Assembly (NCBI RefSeq): GCF_006345805.1
Contig: NC_043003.1
Location: 52,266,001 to 52,330,000, forward strand
DNA length: 64,000 nucleotides
Source of the DNA: Octopus sinensis
Taxonomy: Eukaryota
Direction: 5' to 3'
Part shown: piece by piece, positions 24,365 through 60,716 of the stretch
Numbering within the stretch: position 1 is the first letter of the stretch
Layout of the letters: each line of letters begins with the position of its first letter
The notes under the pieces: model-generated
What the model saw: the letters and a program-made list of their open reading frames with translations, nothing else
Database searches by the model: none
Told to the model about the DNA's origin: nothing
Translations under genes and position numbers: made by a program

Positions 24365-24397
<33 letters not shown>

Positions 24398-32560: not shown

Positions 32561-32596
32561 TATTTTCAAATAATTTCATACATTTTATTTATTCTT
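32561..32596 (-). terminator. Putative poly(A) signal block of ZNF-A
   Basis: Minus strand AAGAATAAATAAAATGTATGAAATTATTTGAAAATA, identical to 46767-46802. Confidence 0.65.
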
Positions 32597-33399
32597 TACA
32601 CTTTATATTTTTAATTTATTCTTATTCTTTGGCACTTCAGATTTTTAAAGATAATAAATTTCATGAGACAAGATTTAGAGTGACAATACATGACAAAAGA
32701 AAAAAACAAACATCATTTGTTTCCTAATACACATACTTTTGATGGCAATTAAATAATGATAAAATTGTGACAGCTGTATATCTATAAGCAGACTAATTAT
32801 CAAAATTAATTCAAAATAAATTAAACTGAAAATGCAACAACACATTATCAGTAATAATTTGATAGACAGGTTTACACACTTATATAAAATATAATAATAA
32901 TTTACACCACAGTGGCACAAGAGTTTACAATCAGAAAGTGGAAAAGTTACATTTATGAAATTTTGAATATTTTTCAGAAGAGTTTCTCAACGAGTATAGT
33001 ATATCAAAAGATATAAGTCTATTCTAAAAAGTCATGATTGGGGAAATATTTTCCTCTGAAATAATTCTACTAAAATGTCACAATAACATTATAACAATTA
33101 CTTTCACACAATTTCTAAGAATTACTATACATTCTAATATAGCATAGTTTCTACAGGTTTCATGTTGTGATAACTTCATTCATTGCCAAAAACAAAAAAC
33201 AAAAAAAATGTTTTCCAAGGTTATAACAGTGATAGAATTTCACAACTGCACCAATATATAAATGGAACTAGCTAAAACACAAAGAGAATAGTTTAATCAT
33301 AAATATCACCCGTATAAATATTTTAATATGTCCATGTGAGAATGATATACTGTGTACATCACAGTGGAGTTTACCAAATGTTTACAACAGACAATATGG

Positions 33400-34880
33400 T
33401 ATGAGAAAAGTTAAATACACCAGAATATATTTAGTTTTCCATTAAAATGATTTGGCTAAAGATTTCTCAAGTTTATGTCTGTCTCAAAATGTCGGGCAAA
33501 TGTGTTCAGTCAAGCTGAGTCTCAGTTTTGGTCCTCACATACAAAGATGCTATCTAGTTTTATACTTGTCAAAACTACAGCATTTGATGACTAATTCTGA
33601 AAACCTATAGTGATTACTATATTTGACTACAAGGAGACTGTAGTACTGTACTTTTGTTAGTTTGTCATGCCCTTCCAGATAGGTGAGGCTGTTGATGTTC
33701 ATTCATCTGTAGATTGATGTTATATGGGCCTCCAGTGGGTTGTAGTTCTGAGGCTGAGTGAAGTGTTTAGTAAAGGAGTTCGCTGAGAGATCATCAAAAA
33801 GTGCGAGTCTAGCATTTGTATCAACTTTGATAGGTTTAATTGTGTTAGAGGGCTTGTTTCTTTGATTTGTATCTTTGTGCTGTTGAAGGAGACTAGATTG
33901 TCATATAAACACATTGAAAGTTGTTTTCAAGAGGCTTGTTCATGGAGGTAGTATATGATTGAGGTGTGGTTTTTAGGATGTACATCAATGTTGCTGAACA
34001 TAGGAGTGAAGGGTGGAACTGTCGGCAGAAGAAAGGTTGTGTCTATTTTTAAGTGATAGTAAATTTATAATTAATGTACAGGAAGAAAGGTTTGATTGAC
34101 ATAACCACACCTTGAATACACCAGAGTTTATGGAGTGTGAATCTGCACATGTTGCAATTGTCTAACAGGAATCCAAAAATGAAAGACAGATGGAGACCAT
34201 ATTTGGGCAAAGTAACTAGGTTTTTATACTAAACATGGTCAAAAGATTTGCTGATTTCAGATGCGACAATTTTGCTTGCACTAGAGTTATGTAAGAGCAA
34301 AACTTCAGTTTATCTGCATCCACAGAAATTATATTGTATTTAATCATCATCTTTGAAAAGCTAGGAGTGATATATTGGCAGTCAGGGAAATTACCCATTT
34401 TGAAGAATATGAGACACTTTATTAAATCGGAATAGATTCTGGTAGGTATAGACTAACTGGTTATAACTCAGGAATACACAGATTAAGTGTGATTAAAAGA
34501 AAGTTAAAAGTTGTCTTGTTGGGCTGAAGTGATTCAGGAGATTTTTGCACATGATGATTGAATTCATGTGGTTTGGATGAAATTGGAGACATTGGGAAGG
34601 AGAGATTGAGAGAGTGTTGTAGAGCATGTGCAGTGTGGAATTGAAGCGAAGAACAAATGACAAAGTGGATGAGCAGCTAACATAAGCTGTCTTGTTTGTG
34701 GAATGGTGGGTTGAGGTCAGTAGAGAACACTTTTGTGCAAGGGATCATAAAACTCAGGAAGTGAGAGAGCTTGCAGGCTATGTCATGCACAAAGACACTT
34801 CTTTTCTGCGTTTCAGAGGTGGTTGCTACAGTGGATACAAACTTTTATGTTCATGTTGATTACAGGCATTAGTTGCATGA
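33400..34880 (-). mobile_element. Decayed Jockey/CR1-superclade LINE ORF2 in the putative ZNF-A 3' UTR
   Basis: FASNSTL-like (about 34640), PDCQY, EISKSFDHV*YKNL..YGLH, INSGV.QG..FLYIN, ADSSTLH and NLVSFNSTK, in RT order. Confidence 0.75.
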
Positions 34881-35223
34881 AAGATGTGTTGGCCAGTAGT
34901 CAAAATAACTACTTGTTGAAGGTGGTGTTGTTAAAGCTGACAGCATATTAGGTGGATAATGCCCAACTCAGATAAAACAATGAACATTTAAAAATTAGAC
35001 CGGTATGTTCTCTTTAAAGCAAGATTAAAATACTTTTGCATGCAATTAACTAATCTGGTCTAAAAACATGCTACATAATGTCACAATTGGTTAACAATAT
35101 TTTTAGTTTAGGCTATGTTTTTCAGAAGAGATAAAAGTTACTTCCTTAATATACTGCAAAAAGGACAGCTAACATGTTGCAACAGATGTTAATGGTCAAA
35201 TCCCAGCACTTAGCGTAAAATGA

Positions 35224-37146
35224 TTATTCTACTGCATGAACATGCTGGTGAATATTCAAAGTTGTTTTATGTGAAAATGTTTTACCACAGATTTCGCAAT
35301 GGTATGGTTTTTCCCCTGTGTGGATGCGTTTATGAATAGTTAAAATGATATTTGCAGAGAACGCTTTATTGCAGATGTCACACTGATAGGATTTTTCTCT
35401 TGTGTGAATACGTTTGTGAAGAGTCAGATACTCGTTGCGAGAAAATGTTTTACCACAAGTATCACAATGGTATGGTTTCTCACCTGAATGAATATGTTTG
35501 TGTCTGATTAAATATCTCTTCTGTGCGAATATTTTCCCACAGACATCACATTGGTGTAGTTTTTCACCAGCATAAAAATGATCGTCAGCTGAATTTTCAC
35601 CTCCTGCAAAATCTTTACCAGAGGTATCACAATGATAAGAACTTGCAGTGTGGATATGTTTGTGCTTAATTAAATATCTCCCCCGTGCAAACTTTTTACC
35701 ACATACATCACACTGGTATGGTTTTTCACCTGAGTGAATGTGTTTGTGACGAGTTAAATCTCCACTTTGAGAGAATGCTTTACCACAAACATCACACTCA
35801 TAAGGTTTTTCCCCTGTATGAATACGTTTGTGACATCTCAAATAATCATTGCGAGAGAATGTTTTGCTACAGATCTCACACTGATATGGTTTCTCTCCCG
35901 AATGAATAAGTTTGTGAGAAGTTAAATACCCATTTCGAGTAAAAGCTTTACCACATATATCACAGCGGTATGGTTTTTCCCCTGAGTGAATATGTTTATG
36001 CCTAATTAAATATCTCTTCCGCGAAAATATTTTACCACAGATATCACACGGGTGTGGTTTATCTGAGTGAATATTTTTATGAGAGGTTAAATTTTCAATT
36101 ACAGTGAACTTTTTACCACAGACATCACACTGGAAAGGTTTCTCAATAGTGTGAATACGTTTGTGACGAGATAAATCTCCACTTATAGAGAATGCTTTGC
36201 CACAGACATCACAGTGATATGGTTTCTCACCTGTGTGAATATTTCGATGATTGCTTAAATGTCCACTTTGAGAAAATGATTTGTGACAGACTTCACACTG
36301 GTATGGTTTCTCATCTGAATGAATACGTTTATGAGAAGTTAAATTTCCACTTGTTGAGAACGATTTACCACAGACATCACATTGGTATGGTTTCTTACCT
36401 GTGTGTATTCGCTTATGACATGTCAGATGTCCACTTCCAGAGAATCTTTTACCACAGACATCACATTCATATGGTTTTACCCCAGTATGAATACGTAGAT
36501 GACGTTTCAAATAATCATTCCGAGAGAACGTTTTAGTACAGATATCACACTGGTACGGTTTCTCCCCAGTGTGAATAAGTTTATGATAAGTTAAATATCC
36601 ATTTTGGGAGAATGATTTGCCACACACATCACACTGGTATGGCTTCTCATTGACATGAACACGTTTATGAACAGATAATGCTTTAGTTTCAGAAAATAAC
36701 TCACCACAGATATTGCAACGATAAGGTTTCTCTTCCGTATGAATACGTTTATGGGCTGCAAAACTTTCACTGGAGTAGAATGTCTTACCACAAACGTCAC
36801 AGCGGCTTGGTTTTATTCCTGAGTGTATTCGTTTGTGACGTTTCAGATTATCATTGCGAGAATATCTTTTACTACAGACATCACAATGGAATGGTTTCTC
36901 TATTGAATATGTACATTTATGGCGAGTTAATTTAGAATTGTCTGAGAAGGTTTTACCACAGATGTCACAGTGATATGGTTTTTTTTCATTGTGGATATTC
37001 TTGTGATTAGTCAAACTATCAGCATCAGAGAATATGAGTAAACATATGCTGCACGTATAGAATTTCTTTGTTAAACGTAATCGTGGCACTTTAGCTTCAG
37101 GTTTTGGTTCATCATTATCTTGACATTTACTTACTGTCTCCTCCAT
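35224..37146 (-). CDS. C2H2 zinc-finger protein ZNF-A, 640 aa, 22 finger units (20 canonical; F2 and F18 degenerate)
   Basis: Open frame with TGEKP-type linkers; in-frame TAA five codons upstream of ATG 37146; no recognisable effector domain. Confidence 0.95.
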   Translation of the reverse strand: MEETVSKCQDNDEPKPEAKVPRLRLTKKFYTCSICLLIFSDADSLTNHKNIHNEKKPYHCDICGKTFSDNSKLTRHKCTYSIEKPFHCDVCSKRYSRNDNLKRHKRIHSGIKPSRCDVCGKTFYSSESFAAHKRIHTEEKPYRCNICGELFSETKALSVHKRVHVNEKPYQCDVCGKSFSQNGYLTYHKLIHTGEKPYQCDICTKTFSRNDYLKRHLRIHTGVKPYECDVCGKRFSGSGHLTCHKRIHTGKKPYQCDVCGKSFSTSGNLTSHKRIHSDEKPYQCEVCHKSFSQSGHLSNHRNIHTGEKPYHCDVCGKAFSISGDLSRHKRIHTIEKPFQCDVCGKKFTVIENLTSHKNIHSDKPHPCDICGKIFSRKRYLIRHKHIHSGEKPYRCDICGKAFTRNGYLTSHKLIHSGEKPYQCEICSKTFSRNDYLRCHKRIHTGEKPYECDVCGKAFSQSGDLTRHKHIHSGEKPYQCDVCGKKFARGRYLIKHKHIHTASSYHCDTSGKDFAGGENSADDHFYAGEKLHQCDVCGKIFAQKRYLIRHKHIHSGEKPYHCDTCGKTFSRNEYLTLHKRIHTREKSYQCDICNKAFSANIILTIHKRIHTGEKPYHCEICGKTFSHKTTLNIHQHVHAVE

Positions 37147-37310
37147 AATGTCTGTTGGTTATCAAATACCAATGTAATTCTTTTTTTTTAAATTTTACAA
37201 ATTACTTCATGGTTAATAAACAAAAGTCACATGTCTTCTTGAAAATGTCATTCTTCTGTTTTTCATACCCTTCTTTATGAATTCCTTTATGAATGTTTGG
37301 TGAGAAATTT

Positions 37311-37320
37311 CCTGAAATAA
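37311..37320 (-). other. Putative 3' splice acceptor of the ZNF-A coding exon
   Basis: ttatttcag|gaaatttctcacc, matched by atttcag|gaaacttctcacc at 51273-51280 in ZNF-B. Confidence 0.7.
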
Positions 37321-37601
37321 TATAGCAACATAACATAAGAATCATGAACATTCTTAGTATATCTATCATGCAGTCTAGTCAATTTTAAGAGACAAAATGT
37401 AGTCTTGTTAACAGTGTGCTCAGAAATATCACCAAATTGTTTTCTAATTTTTCTTTTATCTTTGACTGCGGCCATGCTAGGGCACTGCCTTGAAGGGTTT
37501 AGTTGAATAAACTGACTCCAATATCTTTGGCTGAACTGTTAAGTTATGGAGATATAAAGAAACCATCACTGGTTGGTGAGGGACAGACAAAAACGCACAC
37601 A

Positions 37602-37918
37602 TAATCATCATCATTGTTTAACGTCCGCTTTCCACACTAGCATGGGTTGGACGATTTGACTGAGGGCTGGTGAACCAGATGGCTGCACCAGGCTCCAATC
37701 TTGATCTGGCAGAGTTTCTACAGCTGGATGCCCTTCCTAACGCCAACCACTCTGAGAGTGTAGTGGGTGCATTTTACGTGCCACCGGCACGGGGGCCAGT
37801 CAGGCAGTACTGGCAACGACCTCGCTCGAATCATTTTACATGTGCCAGTAAGGCGACACTGGTAAAGATCACGCTTGAATGGTGCCTTTTATGTGCCACC
37901 AGCACGGACGCCAGTTAG
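37602..37918 (-). mobile_element. RTE 3'-end insertion at the microsatellite position of a minus-strand SINE A remnant (37460-37600)
   Basis: (atc)n attgtttaacgtccgctttcc..gatgcccttcctaacgccaaccact..tgccaccggcac repeats. Confidence 0.85.
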
Positions 37919-38298
37919 ACGTAGTAGTGTTGTAAATGCCTGCTCGGTTTTTTGTACTGTTCACACGTCCAGGTGATCTGGAAATAACAGTCAACATCAC
38001 CAACAGATTCATTAAAAAGTTAAGATGGTAACTTGGTTTTATATGAGAATAACACAACCTAAACAAATATCTCATACATCCATCAAACGCTCCAAGGTAC
38101 AAGTATTTTTCTTTTAACTGTAGATGGTCTATGCACAACCTGCGATGTTGCAAAATGCTTTATTTTGTGATCTTCGTGGTTTATTATGGGGAGATTGTGA
38201 GCTCAAGTAGAGCTAGCGTAATCCACGATGAACCAAATGCATAGTTTATAGACTTGTTTCTGTTTCTTTACCTTACGGAAATAATTATATCAAATGAT

Positions 38299-38683
38299 TG
38301 GCTGTGTGGTAAGTAGCTTGCTAACCAACCACATGGTTCCGGGTTCAGTCCCACTGCGTGGAATCTTGGGCAAGTGTCTTCTGCTATAGCCCCGGGCCGA
38401 CCAATGCCTTGTGAGTGGATTTGGTAGACGGAAACTGAAAGAAGCCTGTCGTATATATATATATATGTGTGTCTGTGTTTGTCCCCCTAGCATTGCTTGA
38501 CAACCGATGCTGGTGTGTTTACGTCCCTGTCACTTAGCGGTTCGGCAAAAGAGACCGATAGAATAAGTACTGGGCTTACAAAGAATAAGTTCCGGGGTCG
38601 ATTTGCTCGACTAAAGGCGGTGCTCCAGCATGGCCGCAGTCAAATGACTGAAACAAGTAAAAGAGTGAAAAAGAGAGAGTAAG
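38299..38683 (+). mobile_element. SINE type A, young copy
   Basis: Full CpG-retaining copy, nearly identical to 24200-24602. Confidence 0.9.
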
Positions 38684-38699
38684 ATGAGAGGGAGGCTCT

Positions 38700-39595
38700 A
38701 CATGGTCGTTCAGGTTGACAGATATAGCAGTCAAATCTCACTCATATCACAAATTACTACCTTAAGAAATAAAAGGACATGCTGAAAAGAATGTGATCGT
38801 TGACTATACTTAAAAAAAATTTTTTTATATATATATTTAGAAATAGGATGGGGAAGTTACGGCTGGGAAGCTTTCAACCATTCTGCTAACTAGGAGCTCA
38901 ACAACAACTACGAAATAATTTCTGACAATACCATTATACTGCCAGCTCAACTAAGGAGCTGCAAGGTGGGTTGCTTGAAATGAAAATAATAGCAGTCAAA
39001 TCCCTCTCAAATATTAGCCTGCCACCTTAAAAACGGCAGAGTACTTTGGATAATACTGCAAACAAAAAAATAAAATAATAGGTGGAAAGCCTTTATTGGC
39101 AATCTTTCGTCTCCCCTTTATTTTACGTCTGCTCAATCGGGGCTGACATGGGGCTAACAAACAATAGCAAAAGTGTCCCTCAAATAACACTCTACTTTCT
39201 TTAAGAAATTACATAACATAACGTAATGACAGATCTACAGAAAGATGGGATGGTCACAGTTGTAATGCATTCGAGCATAAATTTACTTGTACAGGCTTGA
39301 ACAATAACAATGAAGACCGGAAGTAGCACCATTATCTCCTTCTTCAATGTCATAGTCCTGCACATAATTTAACCAAGCGTTTGAGCCAATGAGGGAGTCT
39401 CTGTGTGGTTGCAGACTACTAAAAATAGCAGCAAAACTCACACCTCCCACTGTCTAAAATATACAATGATGATACATAGGTTAATGTAGTCCTACATATA
39501 CTATGACTGAATTAAAACTGTGATGGTCATGGCTGGAATATCTCCTATCGTAAATCTCCTAGATTAACATTTACCTTGGGTTAAACAAACCAACA
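38700..39595 (+). repeat. Four adjacent diverged copies of an unclassified, about 200-bp (AAC)n-tailed element
   Basis: Recurring tagcagtcaaatc..cctcaaat..gatggtca.gg.tg.aat..ggggctaa(ac)aacaa; other copies near 15050, 16150, 17730, 18480, 21035-21510 (minus) and 52150-52905. Confidence 0.6.
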
Positions 39596-39889
39596 AATAT
39601 TTGCATAATTAACAATGAGGTTAACTAACAATTAGGAAAAATGACATTTCAGTCGCATGAAGTCTCTGATATTGTAAAACTACAACAAACAACGAAATTA
39701 TAAAATTAACGAGCAATAAGGAAAATATATTTTCAACTAAATTGAAATTTTCATAATTATAATTTTGTCTCAGAATAGACGAAATGTTGAGATAAAATCT
39801 AATTTTTTTTTTCTTCTGGAGACAAGCAACTTATGAAAGAATCACCGACACAATAACCTTAAAGATAGTCGAGATATATTTGTACAACA

Positions 39890-40215
39890 ACTTACTGTTT
39901 TGTAATCTCTTTCTCGTTCATTTTTGATGTAGATGTGATTGTTGTAGGAAAATGAAGACATTGAACAGAAACAGAAAAGACGTTCATAGCATTAGTGATG
40001 GGAAGAACAAACTAAGTGATATACTTGAATAACATACATAACTAATTTACTAACACCACCAGCCTTACTTTCGTAGCTGACTATTCACTAAAAATATGTA
40101 AAATGTGTTGAACAAAGGAATTCTCACATGTACATTTAAAGAAGGCGATAATGGTAAAATCTGTGCTTCATCGCAAAATTACTATAAATGGAAGTTGTTT
40201 TGATAAAATGGCTTA
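39890..40215 (-). promoter_or_regulatory. Putative non-coding first exon and promoter of ZNF-A
   Basis: Donor aaaaca|GTAAGTTG (intron starts 39895) and TCAGCTACGAAAGTAA (40065-40080), both also found at 59720-59925 upstream of ZNF-B. Confidence 0.62.
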
Positions 40216-40336
40216 AATGAGCGCAGGTTGACTCCTGGCAGTGGTAATGGGGTACATGAACCCAGGGAAAAAGTCAAAGAAAACTTTGATAAATGATAAA
40301 GTTAATGATTTTTGGCAAACTTTCGGTAAAAATCTA

Positions 40337-40422
40337 TGACGTCATGGGTGGATGTGTGACATTGTCTTTCATATGCTTGACAGAGCTGAACAGTCAAATA
40401 CACGCATTCCTGACTGACGTCA
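40337..40422. promoter_or_regulatory. Two perfect CRE palindromes (TGACGTCA)
   Basis: At 40337-40344 and 40415-40422, about 260-340 bp upstream of the conserved ZNF-A motif. Confidence 0.4.
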
Positions 40423-40672
40423 TATACTAATACCGAAATACTGCCTAAAGTTTTGCAATTTTGATTTATTTTATTTTTTCTGTTGTTTTAAGATCTTCAA
40501 TAAAACGTTTATTTTTCACGTACTGTAATATAAATTGTAAGTTTCATCGGAGGAGGGGCAGACCTTGTATTTGCACATATAGGCTTCTCTTGTTACATAC
40601 ACACATATATACAGTTATATACATATACGCTACTGAATGACAAGGGAACAGGAATTACATAATCAATTTCAG

Positions 40673-40754
40673 TAGCCTACAGCTGTTTCTGCCGTATGAA
40701 GCAGTGCACTAGGAGTCCAGTGCCTGTACAACATCTTATAGTTTCCTCAGAGCT
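40673..40754 (-). ncRNA. Type I hammerhead-ribozyme-like motif, copy 1 (base of stem II decayed)
   Basis: Minus: TAGCT-CTGAGGA-[about 55-nt stem II]-GAAA-CAGCTG-TA|GGCTA; 5-bp stem I, palindromic stem III, GUA cleavage triplet. Confidence 0.6.
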
Positions 40755-40862
40755 ATTAAAACGAAAGGTATGTTTATTTCAGAAAACGATTGAATACATA
40801 CACACACACATATATAATTAAATAAATGATAAAAGACCAATAATTATGGAATCAACTTCATT

Positions 40863-40945
40863 TGCTAGCAGTTGTTTCTGCTATAAGCTGCAGTGCACTC
40901 AGAGGTGAGTGTTTATGCATCACCTTATGGCTTCCTCAGAGATTC
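40863..40945 (-). ncRNA. Hammerhead-like motif, copy 2 (stems I and III decayed)
   Basis: Minus: CTGAGGA-A-GCCATAAG..CTTATAGC-A-GAAA-CAACTG; core offset 189-190 nt from copy 1. Confidence 0.5.
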
Positions 40946-41339: not shown

Positions 41340-42305
41340 AGGCACAGCTGTGAGCGTGTGGTAAGAAGCTTGCTTCCCAACCACATGTTTCCGGGTTTGG
41401 TCCCACTGCATGGCAACTTGGGCAAATCTTCTAATATAGCCTCAGGCTGACCAAAGCCTTGTGAGTGGATTTGGTGGACAGAAAATGAAAGAAGCCCATT
41501 ATATATATCATCATCATCATCATCATCATTTAGCGTCCGTTTTCCATGCTAGCATGGGTTGGACGGTTCTACTGGGGTCTGTGAAGCCAGAAGGCTTCAT
41601 CAGGCCCAGTCAAATCTGGCAGTGTTTCTACGGCTGGATGCCCTTCCTAACGCCAACCACTCCGTGAGTGTAGTGGGTGCTTTTTACGTGCCACCCGCAC
41701 TGGTGCCAGACAGAGCTGGCAAACGGCCACGAATGGATGGTGCTTTTTATGTGCCACCGGCACGAGGGCCAGGCGAGGCTGGCAACGGACACGAAACGGG
41801 GCGGTGCTGGCAACGGTCGCGAAACGGAAAGTTCTCTTACATGCCACCGGCACTGGTAACACATCTGCAATTTCCATTGATCGATTTCGATTCTGATCCT
41901 CACTTGCCTCAATGGGTCTTCATATATATATATTTATAATAGGATTAGCTCGTATACGAGTAGGTATATATTTGTAAAAAATGAACTGAAACATGTTATA
42001 ATGTATATATAAAAATTAAAAATTGTATAATACAGCAGCATTTTCGAACTTCATTTTTTACAAATATATATATATATATATCTGTGTGTCTTTTGTGTAT
42101 GTGTTTGTCCCTCCATCACTACTTGACAACCGGTGCTGGTGTGTTTACATCCCATTGCTTAGTGATTTGGGAAAAGATACTGATAGAATAAAAACTAGGC
42201 TTAAAAGATAGGTCCTGGGGTTGATTGCTCATCTAAAACCCTTCAAGGCAGTGCTTCAGCATGGTCACAGTCAAATGACCGAAACAAGTAAAAGAGTGAA
42301 AGAAC
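41340..42305 (+). mobile_element. SINE type A split by an antisense RTE 3' end
   Basis: Head 41340-41500, 3' body about 42075-42305. Confidence 0.75.
41507..41920 (-). mobile_element. 5'-truncated RTE (ORF2 stop region, minisatellite 3' UTR, (GAT)n tail)
   Basis: Minus starts aagacccattgaggcaagtgag, like 1315-1338; several tgccaccggcac units. Confidence 0.85.
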
Positions 42306-42580: not shown

Positions 42581-43075
42581 CCGTAAATCCTCGAGTATAA
42601 TCTGCATTTTTTTCGCAAAATTTAAATGTCAAAATCCCTAATGCGTACTATATATGAAGTTAAAAATGAAAAATATTTTCTAAGTAATGTCTGAGTTTCT
42701 ATTTGCTGTTCGGCAATGTTTATTCAGACGCATTTTGTGATGTTGGGAGTGAAAATACCTTAAGCTAAGCCTGAAAGCAATGAAATCATAAAAGAATCAT
42801 CCATAACTTGCAGTAAGCAACATTTATTAAAATAAAAGTATTCAGAACACAGAATAACACATAACAAAAACAATTTTCAAACATATTTACATTCCCATAT
42901 AACACTTAAGAATATCACCATTATTGTATTACGCATGTGTGGAAGTGTTTGTTTGACTAGGTGCTACAGGCTTCATTACGCACGACTCAAGTTAGAGAAG
43001 GGGGGGGGCGTATTATACAAAGGTTTAGGTTTTTCAGAGGTACAGCCCCTGCATATTATACTCAAGGATTTACGG
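42581..43075. mobile_element. Tc1/mariner (Tc2/pogo-like) MITE
   Basis: TA|CCGTAAATCCTCGAGTATAAT ... ATTATACTCAAGGATTTACGG|TA, 20 of 21 TIR bases match. Confidence 0.88.
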
Positions 43076-43224
43076 TAATTTATAGCTCCAAACTCACAAA
43101 TCTCAAACACCTGAAAAGGTCATGGACACTACCCCTTCCACCAGACTAAGTTTGTAAGAAAACAACAAAATTTAAACAATTATACTTTGAAATGTAAAAT
43201 CTACTAGGAGTGAAAACAAAAAAA

Positions 43225-43560
43225 ACTTTAGTATCTTTTATTTGTTTCAGTCATTAGACTGTGGCCATCACCTTGAAGAATTCTTAGTTGAATGAGTCAA
43301 CCCATTCTATCAGCTCCTTTTGCTGAACTGCTAAGTTATGAGGAGGTAAACACGTCAACACCGGTGGTCAAGCAGTGAGGGTGGGGTGGAAACAAACACA
43401 AAGACCAATATGTATATAGAGAGATGATAGGTTTCTTTTCAGTTTGTCTACTATATCCACTCACAAATCTTTGACTGACCCAGGGCTATAGTTGAAGACA
43501 CTTGCACAAGGTGTCATGCAGTAAGACAGTACCCAGTTCCTTACCACACAGCCATGCCTG
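43225..43560 (-). mobile_element. SINE type A, diverged
   Basis: Reverse complement of body and head. Confidence 0.75.
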
Positions 43561-43800
43561 CATATTGTCTATAGTGTAAAATTTAAACTCAGAAATCAGA
43601 ATTTGGAATATGAGATACTTTGTGGGCTGACTTATTTGAGATTAAGTTTTAATGTTCTGTCTCTCTGTTTATATGTGTGAACATCTAGTTATGTGTGTAT
43701 GTGTGATGTCTCTCTCTATCAGTGTGCGTATATTTGTGCATGAGTGTTTTTGCCTCCAGTGGCAAAACAGGTTGAATGCCCAGTAATGTTCTGAATCGTC

Positions 43801-43862
43801 ATTCTATAGAATGAGATGATTGGGTGCAAAGAGTTGCATCCAATCATCTCATTCTATAGAAT
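43801..43862. other. 29-bp hairpin with 4-nt loop
   Basis: ATTCTATAGAATGAGATGATTGGGTGCAA agag TTGCATCCAATCATCTCATTCTATAGAAT; one G-T pair. Confidence 0.9.
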
Positions 43863-44177
43863 TTGTTAAAAACAACAATTGTACAGCTTCAAGGAAATTC
43901 AATGTTGTTCAGAGCAACGTTTGGCTGTGGACAAAGAGCCAGGTCCAACACAACATAAAATGCTAAGCAGTAACCAATGTTTAGGAGAAAGCAAGCTTAC
44001 TATCCAGAATTAAAAAATGAATTGTCTGAATGGATTTAAGACTAGAAGGAAAGAGAAATACATTGTAACAACACTGCATGTCAGGTTATTGGCAGAAGCA
44101 AACTAAATAAAAAAGGAAGGTTGCAGAATCTGATTTTTGATGATTTAATTCTTAGAGATAAACTCATTTTGTGAACA

Positions 44178-44460
44178 GGTGCAGGAATGACTGTGTGGTA
44201 AGTAGCTTTCTTCCCAACCACATGGTTCCGGGTTCAGTCCCACTGTGTTGCACCTATAAATATATGTGCGTCTGTGTTTGTCGCCCCACCATCGCTTGAC
44301 AACCGATGATGGTGTGTTTGCATTCCCATAACTTAGCAGTTTGGCAAAATAAACCGATAGAATAAGCACTCGGCTTACAAAGAATAAGTCCTGGGGTTGA
44401 TTTGTTCAACTAAAGGTGGTGCTCCAGCATGACCACCGTCAAAGCACAAACAAATAAAAG
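44178..44460 (+). mobile_element. SINE type A with internal deletion
   Basis: Head joined directly to the body after cccactgtgttgcacc. Confidence 0.8.
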
Positions 44461-44599
44461 AATGAACTTTTATTAACATTTGCTATTTTTTTCACTCAAT
44501 AACTTTTAAGCTAAAGTTATGGTAGCAAATGCAGGAATCATGCCAGTTTTAGTGTTCATACCATAGTTTTTTTTTATATCCATAGATGTGCTTTGTATG

Positions 44600-45440
44600 C
44601 TTTTGAAGTTGTTGTTTCTACAACCTGAGGCATCTGCAAACTCACACAGAAGCTCTGAAACAACCCATCTATGAGTTAAATTTCACAGATTATAGTGCCC
44701 TTGTCCACATAGACAGCTCTGCAATGCATCATCCCTTGCTTTGCAGAAGCTGTCTGGGACTTGGGCCTAGAAGCCAGTTTAAACAAAACAGAAGTCCTCC
44801 ATCAACCTATACCACCCCTTCACATCACCATTAGGGAGAATGAAATAAAGACAGTCAACTAATTTATCTACTTTGGGCACTCCATCTCATGATACTAAGA
44901 ATCAACATGGAAGCCGACAATAGACTGGCCGAAGTAAACAGTGCATCCATGGACTTGTACAATGTCTGGAACAATAACCATGAGGAAGGGAACCAAGATC
45001 AGTGAGTACAGAACCATTGTTCCAACCATATTCTTGTATGACTTGTGAGCCATCTATTGGCACCACCAACTTATTGAGCAATTCAATCAGTGCTTCTTTT
45101 ACATTTTCCTTAACATCCAGTGGCATGACTGTCTAACATTGAGATCCAAGAGCAGGTGGGGGTCACCAGTAGCAAAGCAACACTGCTGAATACAGCTAAT
45201 GCTGGGTGGATCACATCACTGACTTCCTAAGATCATGTCATATGGTGAACTCTTCTCTGGTTACTGATAGAGGAGCACCAAAGAAGACAAAGACTCCCTA
45301 AAAAAAAAAAATCTCTGGGTGCCTGCCACATTGGTCATCACCATTAGTCTGGTCTTGCTGTTGATTATGAAGCCTGGTATCTCACTGTCCCCTGGGCAAT
45401 ACCTTCATTTGAAGACACCTACAGGACCAGCCTTACTGAC
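44600..45440 (+). mobile_element. Decayed RTE (BovB-like) RT fragment
   Basis: YNLRHLQTHTEALKQPIYELNFTDYSALVH..FAEAVWDLGLEASLNKTEVLHQP, then broken C-terminal motifs. Confidence 0.75.
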
Positions 45441-46766
45441 AAAAAAAAAAAAAAAAGAGGGAAAACAAAGAAACAACCATCCCTGTTTATCCTGAATTAG
45501 ACTTAGTGGGTATCAGCAAGCCTGCAACAGACAAACATACACACTCCACTCTGTAAACCTCCGTTCATAATCTTCAGAGATTGTATTGCACTAGTGCAAA
45601 TATATATATAACATTGGATTATCAGTTTGACATAAAGTTTCTTCTCATGTATGTTTTACATTGTTATGGAACATATGGAGTAATCAGTTAGATACCATAT
45701 GGTATAATAAGCACTTTGATGACGTATTTATACACATTAGTGGAACATTCCTATCAAAACTTCTAAGTGCAAACATAACAGAATGAAAACCATTGTTTGA
45801 GATGTACAAGAAAAGTATTTACTGTCACAGAAGCCAGCTGTGCTAAAGATGTGAATCTCTCTTCAAAAATCAAAAAAGATAAAGAATAACCACAGACAAC
45901 TGTTCCACATTTAATATAATATTTTTTAAGGTCTTTGTTTGCAGTATCCAGTTCTTTACTTAAATAAAGTTACTTTGCATCGGCATTAAATTTAGAAGCT
46001 GTTTCTAAACTGTACTTCATCATTATAAAGACTATCGCAAGTATAGTGAAATTCACAAAACAGCCTGTCCCATATTTGTCTGTCTGCATATGATGAACAC
46101 AAGCTGGTTAAGACAGAGCCCTCACAACTTGAACAGTCTGACACTCATGACTAATTGTAACACCTCATAGCTTTAACTGCTTTCTGGATCTTACATTTAC
46201 ATCTAACTTGCTTAACATCCACTATATGGTCCCATCAAAAAGCACTGGTTAAGAACTGCTCCTGCTATTGCTGTTCCAAAAAAGTTCTTTTATTAAAGTT
46301 TCTAATACAGAGTGAAATGGCATTTTATCCAAGATATTACTTTTACTTTCATGATATGGTGTATCAGCTTGAGTCGCATATTTCCAGTTGTAGCAGTTGA
46401 TAACAAGGCTAATAGATATTCAATGAACATTATTCTCAACCTTTAGCATTCTTTACTCACTGATAAACTTAAGAAATAATTAGCATTATTATATGCTGTT
46501 TGCATTCAACATCTCAGTGACAATTCTTGAAGAATCAGTACCATTCTTTGCATTTCCTTGTAAATGCTTTACTCACCCTCAGCTTAGGCTATGTCTGAGA
46601 TTATACAATATAGTTAGTCTTCAATTTAATAACAAATACATTCATGGTAAAATTCTTAATTCAAACATCTGAACAACAGAAAAGCTTGGTATCTCTTGTG
46701 GAGTCAAAATTAAACGAAAATCACTCCACCACCCACTAAATAAAGCAGACATCGATACAATCATTT

Positions 46767-46802
46767 TATTTTCAAATAATTTCATACATTTTATTTATTC
46801 TT
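46767..46802 (-). terminator. Putative poly(A) signal block of ZNF-B
   Basis: 36 of 36 bases identical to 32561-32596; contains AATAAA. Confidence 0.65.
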
Positions 46803-47649
46803 CAGTCTTTGCATTCTATTTGTTATATATATATATATTCTTTTTCTTTGGCATTATATAATTTTGAAGATATTTTCATGAAAAACAAGCTTTCAAAGGA
46901 TAAACCTTACATCAATTAATTTTCAAAATACACATTTGTTGTTAGCAATTAATGGCAATGAAATTATGATAAATGTAAGTATATAATCAAACTAATTATT
47001 AAAGTTAATCCAAAGTAAACTAATTGGAAATGCAACAACACGTTTTCGAACATTAATTGGACACATGGCTTCATGTATTTATATAAAATATAATCAGAAG
47101 TTACACTACATTCATAAGAATTGATCAAGTAAATGGCTACAGAAACACATACAAGCTTAAAGCACAGGATCCTTAGGTGAATCACTGATACTATATTGGA
47201 GGGTTCAGGATCAAAGTTTATAAAAATAACTGCTAACTTCTGTCAGCCCAAGAGGGAAAAGTGAAATGGCTGGAATAATGTAACATGAAAATATTTCAAA
47301 GGGGTAAAAGACACATTTATGGAATTTATAATGGATAATTCTTTTAAAACCGCAAGTATTTGTGATGTCAAATGACAAGGTTCAAGAACGATGAAACTTT
47401 GAATTTATTCTATTTAAATTTCATAAAACACTCCATTTTCCCACTTTTACCATAGATACCACCTATATCAATGTTCATGAACAGTTAATATACTGTTTAG
47501 TGAAAATGTTATACTGTGTATATTGCTGTATAGTTATCAATTCCACGAATAAGTTTGTAGTCAAATCAAGTGTATTCCAAGTAAATTTTCACCACAAATA
47601 CCACAATGATATGAGAACACCATACAGCAAATGAGTTCATTCTTGTTAC

Positions 47650-49100
47650 AAGATTACATTTAGTCATCCTTTGAAATTGGGGTAAAGATTTCTATAAGTT
47701 CATGCAGGTCTGACATTTTTAGGAACATATTTTCAATCTAAATCAGATTCAGCCCAGCACACTGTCTAGTTTTAATACTTTATTGTCAAATCTAGACTAC
47801 TTGATGGATTAATTTCGTACACAATATTTATTCCATCTGAGTAAAGGAGAAATGCAGACATCAGGCACCTGAAGGCTATGTTCACAGCAAAAATGTAGGC
47901 CAAACAAGAATTCCAGTATGTTGCAGTTCAGGGAAGGATTGGGTGTAGTGTTTAGAACAAGATCACCATAGGAAATCATTTTAGGGACTTTGATGGATTT
48001 TACTTATGTGTTGTCCATAACTAGATGAGGTGAAGTACAAGACTGATACTTTGATTTGTGTTTATATGATGTTGAAACAGACTAGAGTGTTACATTCTAA
48101 TTGATGGACATTTTCAAGAGCCCTGTGCAAAAAGGTAAAGCAGGTTTGGTGTAAAATATTTAGGTTGTGCACCAATGTTAATGTATATAGAAGTTTCAAG
48201 GGTTAGTGTAGAATCATATGTATAGAGATGACATTGAGACAATCTCAATTATAACAGACCGAAAGTATAAGCTCAGGACTGAAGAGAGTATTATCAGCAA
48301 AGGTCTGACAAGAAGTCTATGATAGAGATGTAAACTAGAGTTGGGGTAATTTAGCTAAAATGTTTTCATACCAAACATGTTTGAGGAATTTGCTGATTTC
48401 AAGTACCACAACAGTGCTTTCACCAGAATTCCAAAGAACAAGAACTGGTGAATAATGAAGGAAAGCAAGTCTCCAGTTGATCTAGATCAAAACAATGAGT
48501 TGTCAGAGAAAGTGGTTTACAACTGTTTCTAATCATCAGTTCTCGAGATAGTGGAGAGAGCATTATAAATATAGGTCTGTAGTCAATGGGGCCTGAAGTT
48601 ACCCATTTTCAGCAATGCACCCAGTCACATGCTTTCATGGACTGAGAGCTTGTGTGTGTGAGAGTGAGAGATTGAATCGTTTAACAAGGACAGAATAGGT
48701 GCTTTGCTTGAGAGGGATGGAAAGAATAAAGTCAGGACTAGTTATTTCAATTAAATCATCAGATATTTGAATGTGAATATTGTGTGAATATAATGGTGAA
48801 ACTAGAAGGAAAATTGCAGGGAGTTTTGTTTGGCATATAGTGTGGAGTTATATAAGTGATGCAAGGAGAAAATATATAGCTTTTACAACTGATGTGCTGC
48901 TTATAAAGTTATTTTCCTGAGGATTCTATGTAGCCAGAAGAGACTCTCTTGGTAAGAGACCAGAAAACTCTGCTGCAGTCTGGGAGGGAAGAAAACATCC
49001 AGGCTATGTCATGCACAAAGACAACTTTCTGCTTTACTTAGAGCAATTCCCAAAATGGAGTTGTTGCTGTTGTTGTTGGTGGCTTATTCTATGTTTTACA
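47650..49100 (-). mobile_element. Decayed Jockey/CR1-superclade LINE ORF2 in the putative ZNF-B 3' UTR
   Basis: DYRPI (about 48575), RSTGDLLSF (about 48460-48483), GESTVVVLEISKFLKHVWYENILAKLP (about 48345-48430); colinear with 33400-34880. Confidence 0.78.
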
Positions 49101-49461
49101 GGCAGAGTTCTTTGTGCAACAAAGCTTTGAGTAAACAATGTGGAGATTCTGAACTTCAAGGGAACTGGTTGTATGAAAGATCTGGAGGGATATACCAAAG
49201 AGGTCAGTTTCAATCACTCAGAGTTGGGATGGAGGCGGAAAAGAGGAAGACATGGACTGAAACAGATTTTTTTTTATTCAATAATGAAGTTAATACTGGC
49301 AAGTATTGGCCACATCAAAATTTTTGGTTAACAACATGATTAGTTTAGCAATGTGTTTCAGCAGAGGTAGTAGTTATAGCTTTAATGTATTGCAAAAAAT
49401 GGATAGCTATCATGTGTTAACATATATTAATGAGCCAGCTCCAATACTGTACAGAGTATAA

Positions 49462-51150
49462 TTACTCTATTGCATGAACATGCTGGTGAATACATAAAGT
49501 AGATTTGTGTGTGAATTCTTTACCACATTTATCACATTTAAATAATGGCTTATCTTCTGTTTGAATACATTTATGTTCAGTCAAAGTTATATTATCAGAA
49601 AATGTCTTACCGCAAGCATCACACGTATATAATTTTTCTTTTGTGTGAATACGTTTGTGAAGTGTCAAATATTCACTTCGAGAGAAAGCTTTACCACATG
49701 TATCACAGTGGTATGGTTTCTCACCTGTGTGAATACGTTTGTGCTTAATTATATATCGTTTCTGGGCAAATATTTTACCACAGACATCACACTGGAATGG
49801 TTTTATACCGGTGTGTATGTGCTTGTGGATAGTTAAATCTTCACGTGTAGAGAAATTTTGATCACAGATATCACAGTGATATGAGTGCGACCCTGAGTGA
49901 ATGTGTTTGTGCCTCACTAAATATCTCTTTTTCAAAAATATTTTACCACAGATATCACACTGGTGTACAGTTTCTGCGTGACTAACTTTATGAGTTGCTA
50001 AAATCTCCATTGTAGAGAACATTTTACCACAGGTATCACACTGGTAAGGTTTCTGAATGGTGTGAATACGTTTGTGACGAGTTAAATCTCCGTTTATAGA
50101 GAATGCTTTGCCACAGACATCACAGTGGTATGGTTTCTCACGTGTGTGAACAGTTCGATGATTGCTTAAATGTGCATTTTGAGAGAATGCTTTATGACAG
50201 ATTTCACACTGGTATGGTTTCTCATTTGAATGAATACGTTTATGGGATGATAAATTTCCAGTTGTTGAGAAAGTCTTACCACAGACATTACACTCGTATG
50301 GCCTCTCACCTGTATGTTTACGCTTATGACACGTTAGATTTGCACTTCCAGAGAATGCTTTACCACAAACATCACATTCATATGGTTTTTCCCCAGTATG
50401 AATACGTGTATGACGTTTCAAGTAATCTTTACGAGAGAATGTTTTATCACAAATATCACAGTGGAAGGGTTTCTCTCCTGTGTGAATAAGTTTATGAGAA
50501 GTTAAATACCCACTCTGAGAGAATGTTTTGCCACATACATCACATTCGTATGGTCTTTCTTTGGTGTGAACACGTTTATGGATAACTAATGGTTTATTTT
50601 TGGAAAATGCTTTGCCACAGACATCACATTCAAATGGTTTCTCATTGAGGTGAGTGCGTTTATGGTTAATTAATGTTTTACTTTTAGCAAATGCTTTACC
50701 ACAGGTATGGCAACGGTAAGGTTTCTTCTCTGTATGAGTGCGTTTATGAGATGCCAATTTCCCAAGGGCTTTGAATGTTTTGCCACAGATATCACAGTGG
50801 AATGCATTTTCTGCAGTGTGGATACGATTGTGGCGGGTTAAATTGTTTTTCTGTGAGAATGTTTTCCTACAGATATCACACTGATATGGTTTGTCACCTG
50901 TGTGGGTAGACTTATGACGAGTTAATTTTGAACGGACATTGAATATTTTACCACAGATATCACAGTGATATGGTTTTCTGTCTGTGTGGATATGTTTGTG
51001 ATTATTCAAACTTTCAATATCAGAGAATATTAGTAAACAGACATCACAGGTGTATAATTTCTTTGCTACACCTAACTGTGCCTCATCAGTTGTATCTTTT
51101 TTCTCAGATTTTATTTCAGTAAGAACCTGATTCTCAGATGTGTCCTCCAT
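49462..51150 (-). CDS. C2H2 zinc-finger protein ZNF-B, 562 aa, 19 finger units (18 canonical; F18 degenerate)
   Basis: Open frame; the first ATG is at 51150 (MEDTSE, matching MEETVS of ZNF-A); the track start at 51168 is a TTG. Confidence 0.95.
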   Translation of the reverse strand: MEDTSENQVLTEIKSEKKDTTDEAQLGVAKKLYTCDVCLLIFSDIESLNNHKHIHTDRKPYHCDICGKIFNVRSKLTRHKSTHTGDKPYQCDICRKTFSQKNNLTRHNRIHTAENAFHCDICGKTFKALGKLASHKRTHTEKKPYRCHTCGKAFAKSKTLINHKRTHLNEKPFECDVCGKAFSKNKPLVIHKRVHTKERPYECDVCGKTFSQSGYLTSHKLIHTGEKPFHCDICDKTFSRKDYLKRHTRIHTGEKPYECDVCGKAFSGSANLTCHKRKHTGERPYECNVCGKTFSTTGNLSSHKRIHSNEKPYQCEICHKAFSQNAHLSNHRTVHTREKPYHCDVCGKAFSINGDLTRHKRIHTIQKPYQCDTCGKMFSTMEILATHKVSHAETVHQCDICGKIFLKKRYLVRHKHIHSGSHSYHCDICDQNFSTREDLTIHKHIHTGIKPFQCDVCGKIFAQKRYIIKHKRIHTGEKPYHCDTCGKAFSRSEYLTLHKRIHTKEKLYTCDACGKTFSDNITLTEHKCIQTEDKPLFKCDKCGKEFTHKSTLCIHQHVHAIE

Positions 51151-53363: not shown

Positions 53364-53389
53364 TTAAGTTTTACAGAGCTCAACAGCAG

Positions 53390-55330: not shown

Positions 55331-55361
55331 CAAATAGCTGAGCAATATACATTTTGAAATA

Positions 55362-60650: not shown

Positions 60651-60652
<2 letters not shown>

Positions 60653-60716
<64 letters not shown>

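What the first reader, a model, noticed from the sequence alone, without database searches (positions are those of the whole stretch)
32561..49462. Both ZNF paralogs carry the same LINE relic, in sense orientation, in their putative 3' UTRs
A ~1.5-kb ORF2 relic starts about 300-450 bp after each stop codon and is colinear between the genes (for example gctatgtcatgcacaaagaca about 445 bp past each stop). The insertion therefore predates the duplication and was retained in both long UTRs, while the introns turned over. Possible explanations are exapted UTR regulation (editing, small-RNA targeting, stability), a link between TE-derived small RNAs and ZNF expression, or a role as a recombination substrate for cluster growth. 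A ZNF-plus-LINE-UTR cassette could mark a whole subfamily.
Basis: partly seen in the sequence, partly recalled or inferred. Interest (0 to 1): 0.72.

Follow-up and report, generated by a model that had tools for sequence, protein, structure and literature searches.

The report
Duplicated octopus ZNF genes share 3' UTR
Two neighbouring octopus zinc-finger genes do share about 2.7 kb of matching DNA after their stop codons, but it is the ordinary leftover of a whole-gene duplication (a probable long 3' UTR), not a LINE retrotransposon relic.

Summary
The window is Octopus sinensis chromosome CM016865.1. It holds two minus-strand C2H2-ZNF paralogs: A (CDS 35224-37146) and B (CDS 49462-51150).

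Confirmed:
- The quoted 21-mer occurs once after each stop.
- The 3' flanks are colinear for about 2.9 kb, at 71% identity.

Not confirmed: the LINE ORF2 relic.
- Six-frame Pfam scans of both flanks found no domain.
- An unfiltered RT profile scored the flanks like shuffled sequence.
- tblastn with 120 LINE RTs found nothing there.
- All three methods detected the real LINE pieces elsewhere in the window.

What is there is a DNA-level duplication of a whole two-exon gene. A non-coding exon 1, both splice sites and the long last exon are all shared. Every homologous non-coding part is about 70% identical, the same as four-fold codon sites (69%), so the flank decays at roughly the neutral rate.

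Evidence for a real ~2.65-kb 3' UTR, without transcript data:
- A 36-bp identical block holds the only positionally shared AATAAA.
- Neither flank carries an interspersed repeat, against about 30% repeat cover in the introns and intergenic DNA.

The only coding fossil in the flanks is about 200 bp of decayed zinc-finger sequence, sense-oriented, at the same position in both.

Verdict: ordinary, low interest.

The parts
35224..37146 (-). Gene A coding sequence: 640-aa C2H2 zinc-finger protein, wholly within the last exon.
   Evidence: ORF list. It is a called gene in GCA_006345805.1 CM016865.1. It is 58% identical to B. Against B, dN is 0.19 and dS is 0.60.
49462..51150 (-). Gene B coding sequence: 562 aa counted from the ATG.
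   Evidence: ORF list. Called gene. The ATG context is aligned with A's.
32570..35223 (-). Gene A putative 3' UTR, about 2.65 kb from the stop to just past the conserved poly(A) signal. Homology to B continues to about 32329.
   Evidence: 70.9% identical to B's UTR. No Pfam domain. 0% intra-window repeats and a largest indel of 40 bp.
46776..49461 (-). Gene B putative 3' UTR, about 2.69 kb. Homology to A continues to about 46586.
32561..32596 (-). 36-bp block identical in A and B (AAGAATAAATAAAATGTATGAAATTATTTGAAAATA). It contains AATAAATAAA at 32584-32593 and is the probable polyadenylation signal of A.
   Evidence: It is the longest exact run in the alignment. About 0.007 runs of 34 nt or more are expected. 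It holds the only AATAAA/ATTAAA hexamers that share a position in both flanks.
46767..46802 (-). The same 36-bp block in B, with AATAAATAAA at 46790-46799. A T/GT-rich stretch follows in both copies.
34774..34797 (-). The B copy is at 49000-49023. In gene sense it reads TGTCTTTGTGCATGACATAGCCTG.
   Evidence: About 0.21 runs of this length are expected by chance, so it is not significant by itself.
33207..33367 (-). Eroded zinc-finger fossil in A's 3' UTR, sense orientation, about 1.86-2.02 kb past the stop.
   Evidence: blastn to ZNF coding DNA of other loci (E=5.7e-6). The finger-DNA profile gives 5.8 bits at the position homologous to B's fossil.
47436..47637 (-). Zinc-finger fossil of about 2 fingers in B's 3' UTR, sense orientation, about 1.83-2.03 kb past the stop. 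It translates as ..YHCGICGEN...FSLNSILTVHEH..
   Evidence: 26 sense-oriented blastn hits to ZNF coding sequences and none antisense. The best hit is to the CDS of A, E=2.4e-9. nhmmer gives 11.9 bits, E=0.001, against a shuffle maximum of 5.7.
37147..37311 (-). 5'-UTR part of A's last exon. It is preceded by a conserved acceptor, TTTCAG|G, with the AG ending at 37312.
   Evidence: Alignment and coordinates. All three frames carry stops before the ATG (read from the sequence).
51151..51273 (-). 5'-UTR part of B's last exon, with the acceptor AG ending at 51274.
39895..40211 (-). A's non-coding exon 1 plus promoter-proximal DNA. It ends in the donor CAG|GTAAGT, with GT at 39893-39894.
   Evidence: A low-copy block, 39860-40211 against 59690-60043, at E=1.4e-27. 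Alignment. 71.1% identity.
59725..60043 (-). B's non-coding exon 1 plus promoter-proximal DNA, with the donor GT at 59723-59724.
37312..39894 (-). Intron of A, 2.58 kb. It carries SINE copies at 37600-37847 and 38277-38755. It aligns with B's intron only within about 100 bp of the splice sites.
51274..59724 (-). Intron of B, 8.45 kb, with at least 6 interspersed-repeat intervals.

Best explanation
A and B are tandem paralogs in an Octopus sinensis C2H2 zinc-finger cluster. They arose from a DNA-level duplication of a complete two-exon gene. That gene has a short non-coding exon 1, one intron, and a long last exon. The last exon carries about 120-165 nt of 5' UTR, the whole coding sequence and a probable 3' UTR of about 2.65 kb.

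The shared sequence after the stop codons is that UTR plus about 230 bp beyond it, inherited by both copies. It is not a LINE ORF2 relic.

Shown: since the duplication, the unconstrained sites of both copies have diverged about 30%, in the UTR as elsewhere. Only the poly(A)-signal block stands out as conserved.

Inferred: the UTR stayed colinear because insertions and large indels in a mature-mRNA exon are selected against. The intron and intergenic DNA were free to be remodelled by SINE and other insertions and by deletions.

Shown at the DNA level, with origin inferred: the only coding fossil in the UTR is about 200 bp of decayed zinc-finger sequence, sense-oriented, already present before the duplication.
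For: Source and gene calls.

Colinear homology from 32329 to 37341 against 46586 to 51305.

Conserved splice sites at the edges of the homology blocks: acceptor TTTCAG|G and donor CAG|GTAAGT.

Uniform divergence across the homologous parts:
- 3' UTR 70.9%.
- Post-poly(A) flank 69.5%.
- 5' UTR 69.2%.
- Exon 1 plus promoter 71.1%.
- Four-fold codon sites 68.6%, n=105.
- In simulation, a true identity of 68.6% aligns at 70.6%.

No LINE signal:
- Pfam was negative in six frames of both flanks, while the window's own LINE gave RVT_1 at 7.8e-34.
- The unfiltered RT HMM gave -1.5 bits for the flanks, with shuffles at a mean of -1.7 and a maximum of 2.1. The relic at 44.3-45.3 kb gave 42.6 bits.
- An RT stays detectable down to about 25-35% decay from the intact element.
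- tblastn with 120 RT proteins maps LINE pieces only at 768-1202, 1671-2135, 44619-45261 and 61021-63826.

Support for a real UTR:
- A 36-bp identical block holds the only positionally shared AATAAA.
- Repeat cover is 0% in 5.34 kb of UTR against 29-33% elsewhere. From 41 repeat intervals in about 50.2 kb, 4.4 are expected in the UTRs, so P(0) is about 0.012 (my arithmetic).
- The SINE copies are 84-93% alike, so they are younger than the 70% paralogy.

Finger fossil.
Against: - No transcript data were available, so the exon 1, splice-site and poly(A) assignments rest on conservation between only two paralogs.
- Non-conserved AATAAA/ATTAAA hexamers exist closer to both stops, so shorter UTR isoforms are possible.
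- About 70% of each intron is single-copy within the window yet not alignable between the paralogs. This requires heavy insertion and deletion turnover, or TE families with no second copy in 64 kb, which I could not demonstrate.
- A LINE relic that was already more than about 30% decayed at the time of duplication would escape every test used.
- No octopus repeat library or whole-genome search was available.
- Pfam did not recognise the finger-fossil peptides.
Confidence: 0.8

Rival explanations
1. An old LINE inserted in sense orientation into the ancestral 3' UTR. About 1.5 kb of its ORF2 has been retained in both paralogs as an exapted regulatory module, for editing, small-RNA targeting or stability.
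For: The flanks are colinear and predate the duplication. Real LINE fragments of at least one family lie elsewhere in the window. An element decayed by more than about 30% before the duplication could not be detected.
Against: - No RT, EN or other domain in any frame.
- RT HMM scores equal those of shuffles.
- No tblastn hit with 120 RT queries.
- No other copy of the flank in the 64-kb window or in 168 kb of other octopus loci, although a SINE control gave 37 hits there.
- Stops occur at random density.
- Divergence equals that of four-fold sites.
- No long inverted repeats and no Rfam match.
Confidence: 0.04
2. The flank is a functionally constrained long 3' UTR. It would act as a post-transcriptional regulatory platform, for example for the expanded octopus microRNA set, possibly shared by a wider ZNF subfamily. 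Its retention would then be more than passive.
For: No repeat insertion and no indel above 40 bp in 2 x 2.65 kb, while the introns and intergenic DNA were remodelled. A conserved poly(A) block. A 24-bp exact block at about +430 nt.
Against: - Bulk identity (70.9%) is no higher than at four-fold sites (68.6%) or in the post-poly(A) flank (69.5%).
- The 24-mer is within chance expectation, about 0.21.
- No homolog of the UTR lies next to any of about 15 other ZNF arrays sampled.
- Selection against insertions is a generic property of exons and needs no special function.
Confidence: 0.15
3. The flank is not transcribed, because the transcripts end at proximal poly(A) sites. The colinearity is then a neutral leftover of the duplication, and the lack of repeats is chance.
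For: Neutral-level divergence. Proximal AATAAA/ATTAAA hexamers at +800 in A and at +75 and +183 in B. No transcript evidence.
Against: - Homology elsewhere stops within about 100-320 bp of the exon boundaries, but it persists across all 2.65 kb here.
- P is about 0.012 for zero repeats.
- The proximal hexamers are not conserved, whereas the distal one sits in a 36-bp identical block with only about 0.007 expected.
Confidence: 0.12
4. One copy is a retrocopy of the other. An mRNA with its long UTR was reverse-transcribed and inserted, which would explain why homology is confined to exonic sequence.
For: Homology is largely restricted to the parts that form the mature mRNA.
Against: - Both copies keep the intron at the same position, with conserved donor and acceptor sites and homologous intron edges.
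- Homology continues about 230 bp past the poly(A) signal, and neither end has an A-rich tail.
- Promoter-proximal DNA is shared.
Confidence: 0.01

Closest known systems
Tandemly duplicated C2H2 zinc-finger gene clusters of coleoid cephalopods (Albertin et al. 2015, PMC4795812, recalled from my own knowledge and seen here only as a cited reference; Holzinger et al. 2025, PMC12513265)
   Same: Octopus-lineage C2H2 genes with many fingers, neighbouring and in the same orientation, in repeat-rich (SINE-rich) DNA, with paralogs diverging after duplication.
   Different: Nothing essential differs. This is one such pair. The papers I searched do not discuss UTRs, so the long shared 3' UTR and the two-exon structure are only added detail.
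TE-derived (exapted) 3' UTR segments, such as LINE or SINE fragments embedded in the UTRs of vertebrate genes including KRAB-ZNFs (my own knowledge)
   Different: No TE could be shown in these UTRs. They are the only long non-coding stretches in the window without any interspersed repeat.
Degenerate or fossil zinc fingers downstream of the stop codon in vertebrate KRAB-ZNF genes (my own knowledge of the ZNF evolution literature; not checked in a paper here)
   Same: A sense-oriented remnant of finger-coding sequence lies in the 3' UTR of both paralogs.
   Different: It lies about 1.85 kb beyond the stop, not directly after it. It is only about 2 fingers long, and no finger signal lies between it and the stop. 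It may be a fragment of an older neighbouring ZNF rather than a truncated tail of the same array.

Membership tests
LINE (non-LTR retrotransposon) ORF2 relic | Similarity to a reverse-transcriptase domain | tested here: not met
   Pfam in six frames found no RVT_1. The unfiltered RT HMM gave -1.5 bits, equal to shuffles. tblastn with 120 RT proteins gave nothing in the flanks. The positive controls worked.
LINE (non-LTR retrotransposon) ORF2 relic | Similarity to an AP-endonuclease domain or another ORF2 or ORF1 domain | tested here: not met
   No Pfam family at E<=10 except one chance TadE match at E=1.5. tblastn with the EN and C-terminal ORFs of the window's LINE gave no hit in the flanks.
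LINE (non-LTR retrotransposon) ORF2 relic | Interspersed and multi-copy: other copies elsewhere in the genome | tested here: inconclusive
   No other copy in the 64-kb window or in 168 kb of seven other octopus loci, where a SINE control gave 37 hits. The whole genome could not be searched.
LINE (non-LTR retrotransposon) ORF2 relic | A 3' tail (poly(A) or microsatellite) and target-site duplications bounding the insert | tested here: not met
   No insert boundaries exist. Identity is flat at 0.62-0.81 along the whole flank, and direct-repeat searches gave only short chance pairs.
Tandem gene duplicate (DNA-level paralog pair) | Colinear homology across exons and adjacent flanks, in the same orientation | tested here: met
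Tandem gene duplicate (DNA-level paralog pair) | Shared intron position with conserved splice sites, which excludes retroposition | tested here: met
Tandem gene duplicate (DNA-level paralog pair) | Similar divergence in all unconstrained parts, indicating a single event | tested here: met
   69-71% in four non-coding parts, and 68.6% at four-fold sites.
Bona fide 3' UTR | A polyadenylation signal at its end, conserved between the copies | tested here: met
   AATAAATAAA lies inside a 36-bp identical block at +2.63 and +2.66 kb. T/GT-rich sequence follows it.
Bona fide 3' UTR | Transcript evidence (RNA-seq, Iso-Seq or 3'-end reads) | not testable with these tools
   The exact proteins were found only on the genome assembly and not on any transcriptome-type contig.
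C2H2 zinc-finger coding fossil | Sense-oriented DNA similarity to finger-coding units, in several registers and to several genes | tested here: met
   B has 26 sense hits and 0 antisense hits, the best at E=2.4e-9. nhmmer gives E=0.001. A is weaker, at the homologous position.
C2H2 zinc-finger coding fossil | A recognisable C2H2 domain at the protein level | tested here: not met
   Pfam found nothing on the translated fossil peptides. Only partial C..C and H...H residues are visible.

The most novel reading that the evidence does not exclude
The ~2.65-kb 3' UTR, kept free of insertions in both paralogs and carrying a sense zinc-finger fossil, could be a selected post-transcriptional control module. 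For example, microRNA or small-RNA sites that also match ZNF coding repeats would allow cross-regulation within the family. Such a module might mark a wider octopus ZNF subfamily that could not be sampled here.
Probability: 0.07. Interest if true: 0.35.

Novelty: already known. Interest (0 to 1): 0.1.

Why it matters
It matters little beyond annotation. The result removes a false lead: there is no LINE-in-UTR cassette here. It gives a cleaner gene model for two Octopus sinensis ZNF paralogs, each with a non-coding exon 1, a single intron, a last exon that carries the whole CDS, and a ~2.65-kb UTR. It also gives a small worked example of how, in the SINE-rich octopus genome, exonic non-coding DNA stays colinear while introns and spacers are rebuilt. 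If the UTR were later shown to be shared by many paralogs, it could help to define a ZNF subfamily and its regulation.

Tried and rejected
1. Finding orthologs or close paralogs in order to compare their 3' flanks.
- The full-length ZNF search was swamped by vertebrate ZNFs, with no hit above 57% identity.
- The N-terminal profile search returned only short proteins at 59% identity or less. None has the subfamily's C..CLLIF first finger.
- The exact sequences are not in the clustered collection.
- All three homolog searches are now used.

2. Transcript-type contigs carrying either protein: none. Only the genome assembly carries them.

3. Seven other octopus ZNF loci (L003-L009, 168 kb) were sampled.
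- The UTRs have no homolog there.
- One apparent hit, in L008, is an (AAT)n microsatellite and no better than shuffles.

4. Searches of the window and the UTRs that found nothing:
- Rfam and tRNA scans of the window.
- Inverted and direct repeats in the UTRs, which gave only short chance pairs.

5. Retroposition as the duplication mechanism is rejected, because both copies share the intron and neither has an A-tail.

6. A 14.2-kb tandem unit with alignable spacers is rejected. Outside the exons only a low-copy exon 1 block matches, and it lies off the diagonal by 5.6 kb because the introns differ in size.

7. The similarly placed SINEs in the two introns (38296-38691 and 52216-52803) are 84-91% alike. 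That is too similar to be positional homologs at 70% paralogy, so I treat them as independent insertions.

8. The first Pfam attempts with raw DNA references failed because of stop codons. They were redone with X at each stop.
Full report
SOURCE AND LAYOUT

The window has 35-38% G+C and is rich in microsatellites. Both long ORFs are called genes on Octopus sinensis GCA_006345805.1, chromosome CM016865.1. The record coordinate is the window coordinate plus 52,266,000.

The window holds exactly two C2H2 zinc-finger ORFs, both on the minus strand:
- A: 35224-37146, 640 aa.
- B: 49462-51150, 562 aa counted from the ATG.

The two proteins are 58% identical in the best local alignment. A codon comparison gives dN 0.19 and dS 0.60.

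CHECKING THE OBSERVATION

The 3' flanks are colinear:
- A relaxed blastn gives one alignment, 32527-36802 against 46735-51049.
- A global alignment of the flanks alone scores 311, against at most 10.5 for shuffled partners.
- Identity is 71.2% over 2555 ungapped columns, with 716 gap columns.
- Identity is flat along the flank, 0.62-0.81 per 150 nt.

The colinearity claim is therefore correct and far beyond chance. The quoted motif sits in a 24-nt exact run. At 71% identity about 0.21 runs of that length are expected, so it is not significant by itself.

IS THERE A LINE ORF2 RELIC?

I found no evidence for one.
- Six-frame translations of 32000-35223 and 46500-49461, with X at each stop, gave no Pfam family at E<=10 apart from one chance TadE match at E=1.5. 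In the same scan the window's own LINE at 61.2-63.8 kb gave RVT_1 at 7.8e-34.
- I built an RT profile from 60 homologs of that LINE's RT and ran it without filters. The best score in either flank was -1.5 bits. Forty shuffles gave a mean of -1.7 and a maximum of 2.1. A genuine decayed relic at 44.3-45.3 kb scored 42.6 bits.
- tblastn with 120 RT-family proteins maps LINE pieces at 768-1202 (+), 1671-2135 (-), 44619-45261 (+) and 61021-63826 (-). Apart from five weak hits (E 0.002-0.009) inside the two ZNF coding sequences, nothing else matched, and nothing in the flanks.
- In-silico decay of the intact LINE shows that an RT is still found at about 25-35% divergence from the intact element. Each flank is only about 15-17% from the duplication ancestor, which is half of the pairwise 29-31%. 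An ORF2 that was recognisable when the gene duplicated would therefore still be visible. Only an element that was already badly decayed by then could hide.
- Stops occur at the density expected from base composition: 69 in 1074 codons, against about 1 in 14 expected (my own calculation).
- The flanks have no second copy in the window. They have none in 168 kb around other octopus ZNF genes either, where a SINE from this window gave 37 hits.

WHAT THE GENES LOOK LIKE

Homology upstream of the ATG runs to a conserved acceptor, a pyrimidine tract followed by TTTCAG|G. The acceptor AG ends at 37312 in A and 51274 in B, which is 165 and 123 nt before the ATG. Homology then fades within about 100 nt.

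A low-copy block, 39860-40211 in A against 59690-60043 in B (E=1.4e-27), ends in a conserved donor, CAG|GTAAGT. Exon 1 therefore ends at 39895 in A and 59725 in B.

All three frames between the acceptor and the ATG contain stops (read from the sequence), so exon 1 is non-coding.

Each gene thus has two exons and one intron, of 2.58 kb in A and 8.45 kb in B. The shared intron rules out retroposition as the source of the pair. So does the end of the 3' homology, which lies about 230 nt past the poly(A) signal with no A-tail.

IS THE FLANK A UTR, AND IS IT CONSTRAINED?

The longest exact run in the flank alignment is 36 nt, at 32561-32596 in A and 46767-46802 in B. About 0.007 runs of 34 nt or more are expected. 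This block contains AATAAATAAA, the only poly(A) hexamers that sit at the same alignment position in both flanks, 2.63 and 2.66 kb after the stops. T/GT-rich sequence follows in both copies. I infer that this is the poly(A) signal.

Repeat content also points to an exon:
- The two putative UTRs (5.34 kb together) contain no sequence repeated elsewhere in the window. The introns, the spacer and the left flank are 29-33% repeat.
- There are 41 repeat intervals in about 50.2 kb of that other non-coding DNA. That gives 4.4 expected in the UTRs, so P(0) is about 0.012 (my arithmetic).
- The largest indel between the two UTRs is 40 bp.
- The SINE copies in the introns are 84-93% like other copies, so they are younger than the 70% paralogy.

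At the substitution level nothing marks the UTR out:

| Part | Identity between A and B |
|---|---|
| 3' UTR | 70.9% |
| 230 nt after the poly(A) signal | 69.5% |
| 5' UTR | 69.2% |
| Exon 1 plus promoter | 71.1% |
| Four-fold codon sites (n=105) | 68.6% |

The non-coding values come and the four-fold value. In simulation, a true identity of 68.6% aligns at 70.6% with my scoring.

The flank therefore decays at about the neutral rate. Colinearity was preserved, most simply by the ordinary selection against insertions and large indels in exons. That step is inferred.

I found no long inverted repeats that could form editing substrates. There were no Rfam or tRNA matches.

A CODING FOSSIL, BUT FROM ZINC FINGERS

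Comparing the UTRs with other octopus ZNF loci showed one segment that matches zinc-finger coding DNA, always sense to sense.
- In B the segment is 47436-47637, 1.83-2.03 kb past the stop. It has 26 hits to ZNF coding sequences and none antisense. The best hit is to the CDS of A, E=2.4e-9, 64.7% over 150 nt.
- A profile of the 35 finger-coding units of A and B scores 11.9 bits there (E=0.001), against a shuffle maximum of 5.7.
- The translation still reads YHCGICGEN...FSLNSILTVHEH.
- The homologous position in A, 33207-33367, is more eroded but still matches (E=5.7e-6; 5.8 bits).
- Pfam does not recognise the peptides, so this rests on DNA-level evidence.
- The rest of the UTR shows no finger signal, and control regions gave only single weak hits.

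A small sense-oriented coding relic that predates the duplication does therefore exist in both UTRs. It is about 0.2 kb of zinc-finger sequence, not 1.5 kb of ORF2. I cannot say whether it is the tail of a once longer array or a scrap of an older neighbouring ZNF.

COMPARISON WITH WHAT IS KNOWN

Lineage-specific C2H2-ZNF expansions in cephalopods are well described, and duplicates are noted to arise in tandem (PMC12513265). A link between ZNF expansion and TE load across metazoans, octopus included, is also described (PMC10547256). Neither paper discusses UTRs.

This pair is an ordinary member of such a cluster. It fails the tested defining features of a LINE relic. It meets those of a DNA-level tandem duplicate.

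LIMITS

- There are no transcript data, no octopus repeat library and no whole-genome search.
- No orthologs or close paralogs could be retrieved.
- The idea that the UTR marks a whole subfamily was tested only against seven other ZNF loci, with a negative result.

VERDICT

The colinear 3' flanks are real. The LINE identity and the exaptation reading are not supported. What is there is a duplicated two-exon ZNF gene with a probable long 3' UTR that drifts at the neutral rate. Interest is low.

Noticed in passing
window 61021-63826 (-), with a microsatellite at 60640-61014: A nearly intact LINE lies about 1 kb upstream of gene B's exon 1, on the same strand. It is split into three ORFs: a partial endonuclease, an RT (RVT_1 at 7.8e-34) and a C-terminal ORF. 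Its 3' end abuts a (TA/TATACA)n microsatellite. Its RT is 79% identical to an O. bimaculoides protein and 60-70% identical to proteins annotated in fish, amphioxus and echinoderms. That is an unusually wide spread and could reflect an old, widespread clade or horizontal transfer.
   Followed up: partly
window 47436-47637 and 33207-33367 (-): A zinc-finger coding fossil of about 2 fingers lies in the 3' UTR of both paralogs, sense-oriented and at homologous positions, 1.83-2.03 kb past the stops. No finger signal lies between it and the stop.
   Followed up: yes
window 39860-40211 / 59690-60043, 37312 / 51274, and 39893-39894 / 59723-59724: Both ZNF genes have a conserved non-coding exon 1 and one intron, of 2.58 kb in A and 8.45 kb in B. 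The donor CAG|GTAAGT and the acceptor TTTCAG|G are conserved. The gene calls held for the assembly cover only the ORFs.
   Followed up: yes
window, e.g. 2154-2669, 15425-15838, 24201-24618, 25167-25484, 38296-38691, 41356-41752, 44185-44466, 52216-52803: An abundant SINE-like repeat of about 400-600 bp occurs in both orientations, with copies 71-93% alike. It gave 37 hits in 168 kb of other octopus loci. A longer variant carries an extra ~180-bp segment (41356-41752 and 52227-52611). No tRNA or Rfam match was found.
   Followed up: partly
window 38296-38691 and 52216-52803: SINE copies sit at nearly the same distance upstream of the two ATGs, about 1.15 and 1.07 kb. They are 84-91% alike, much more than the 70% paralogy of the genes. 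I read them as independent insertions, but gene conversion is not excluded.
   Followed up: partly
L004 and L005 (O. sinensis CM016885.1, 10.05-10.08 Mb and 10.41-10.44 Mb): Two ZNF-containing loci 356 kb apart are 99% identical over 23.5 kb and encode the identical protein P0182. This is either a very recent large segmental duplication in another ZNF cluster or an assembly duplication.
   Followed up: partly
window 22209-22630 and 31476-31897: A 422-bp low-copy direct repeat at 94.5% identity, 9.3 kb apart and downstream of gene A. It is much younger than the gene duplication. Its nature is unknown.
   Followed up: no
window 35224-37146 (-), residues ~500-530 of protein A: Protein A contains a broken finger (..SSYHCDTSGKDFAGGENSADDHFYAGEK..). 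It differs from B by one-finger (28 aa) and roughly two-finger indels, so the arrays have changed their finger number since the duplication.
   Followed up: no
window 44619-45261 (+), 768-1202 (+), 1671-2135 (-): Decayed LINE RT fragments of the same clade as the intact element. The one at 44.6-45.3 kb lies about 1.5-2.2 kb downstream of B's poly(A) signal and antisense to the ZNF genes. It is the only LINE relic near either gene, and it is not shared by A.
   Followed up: yes
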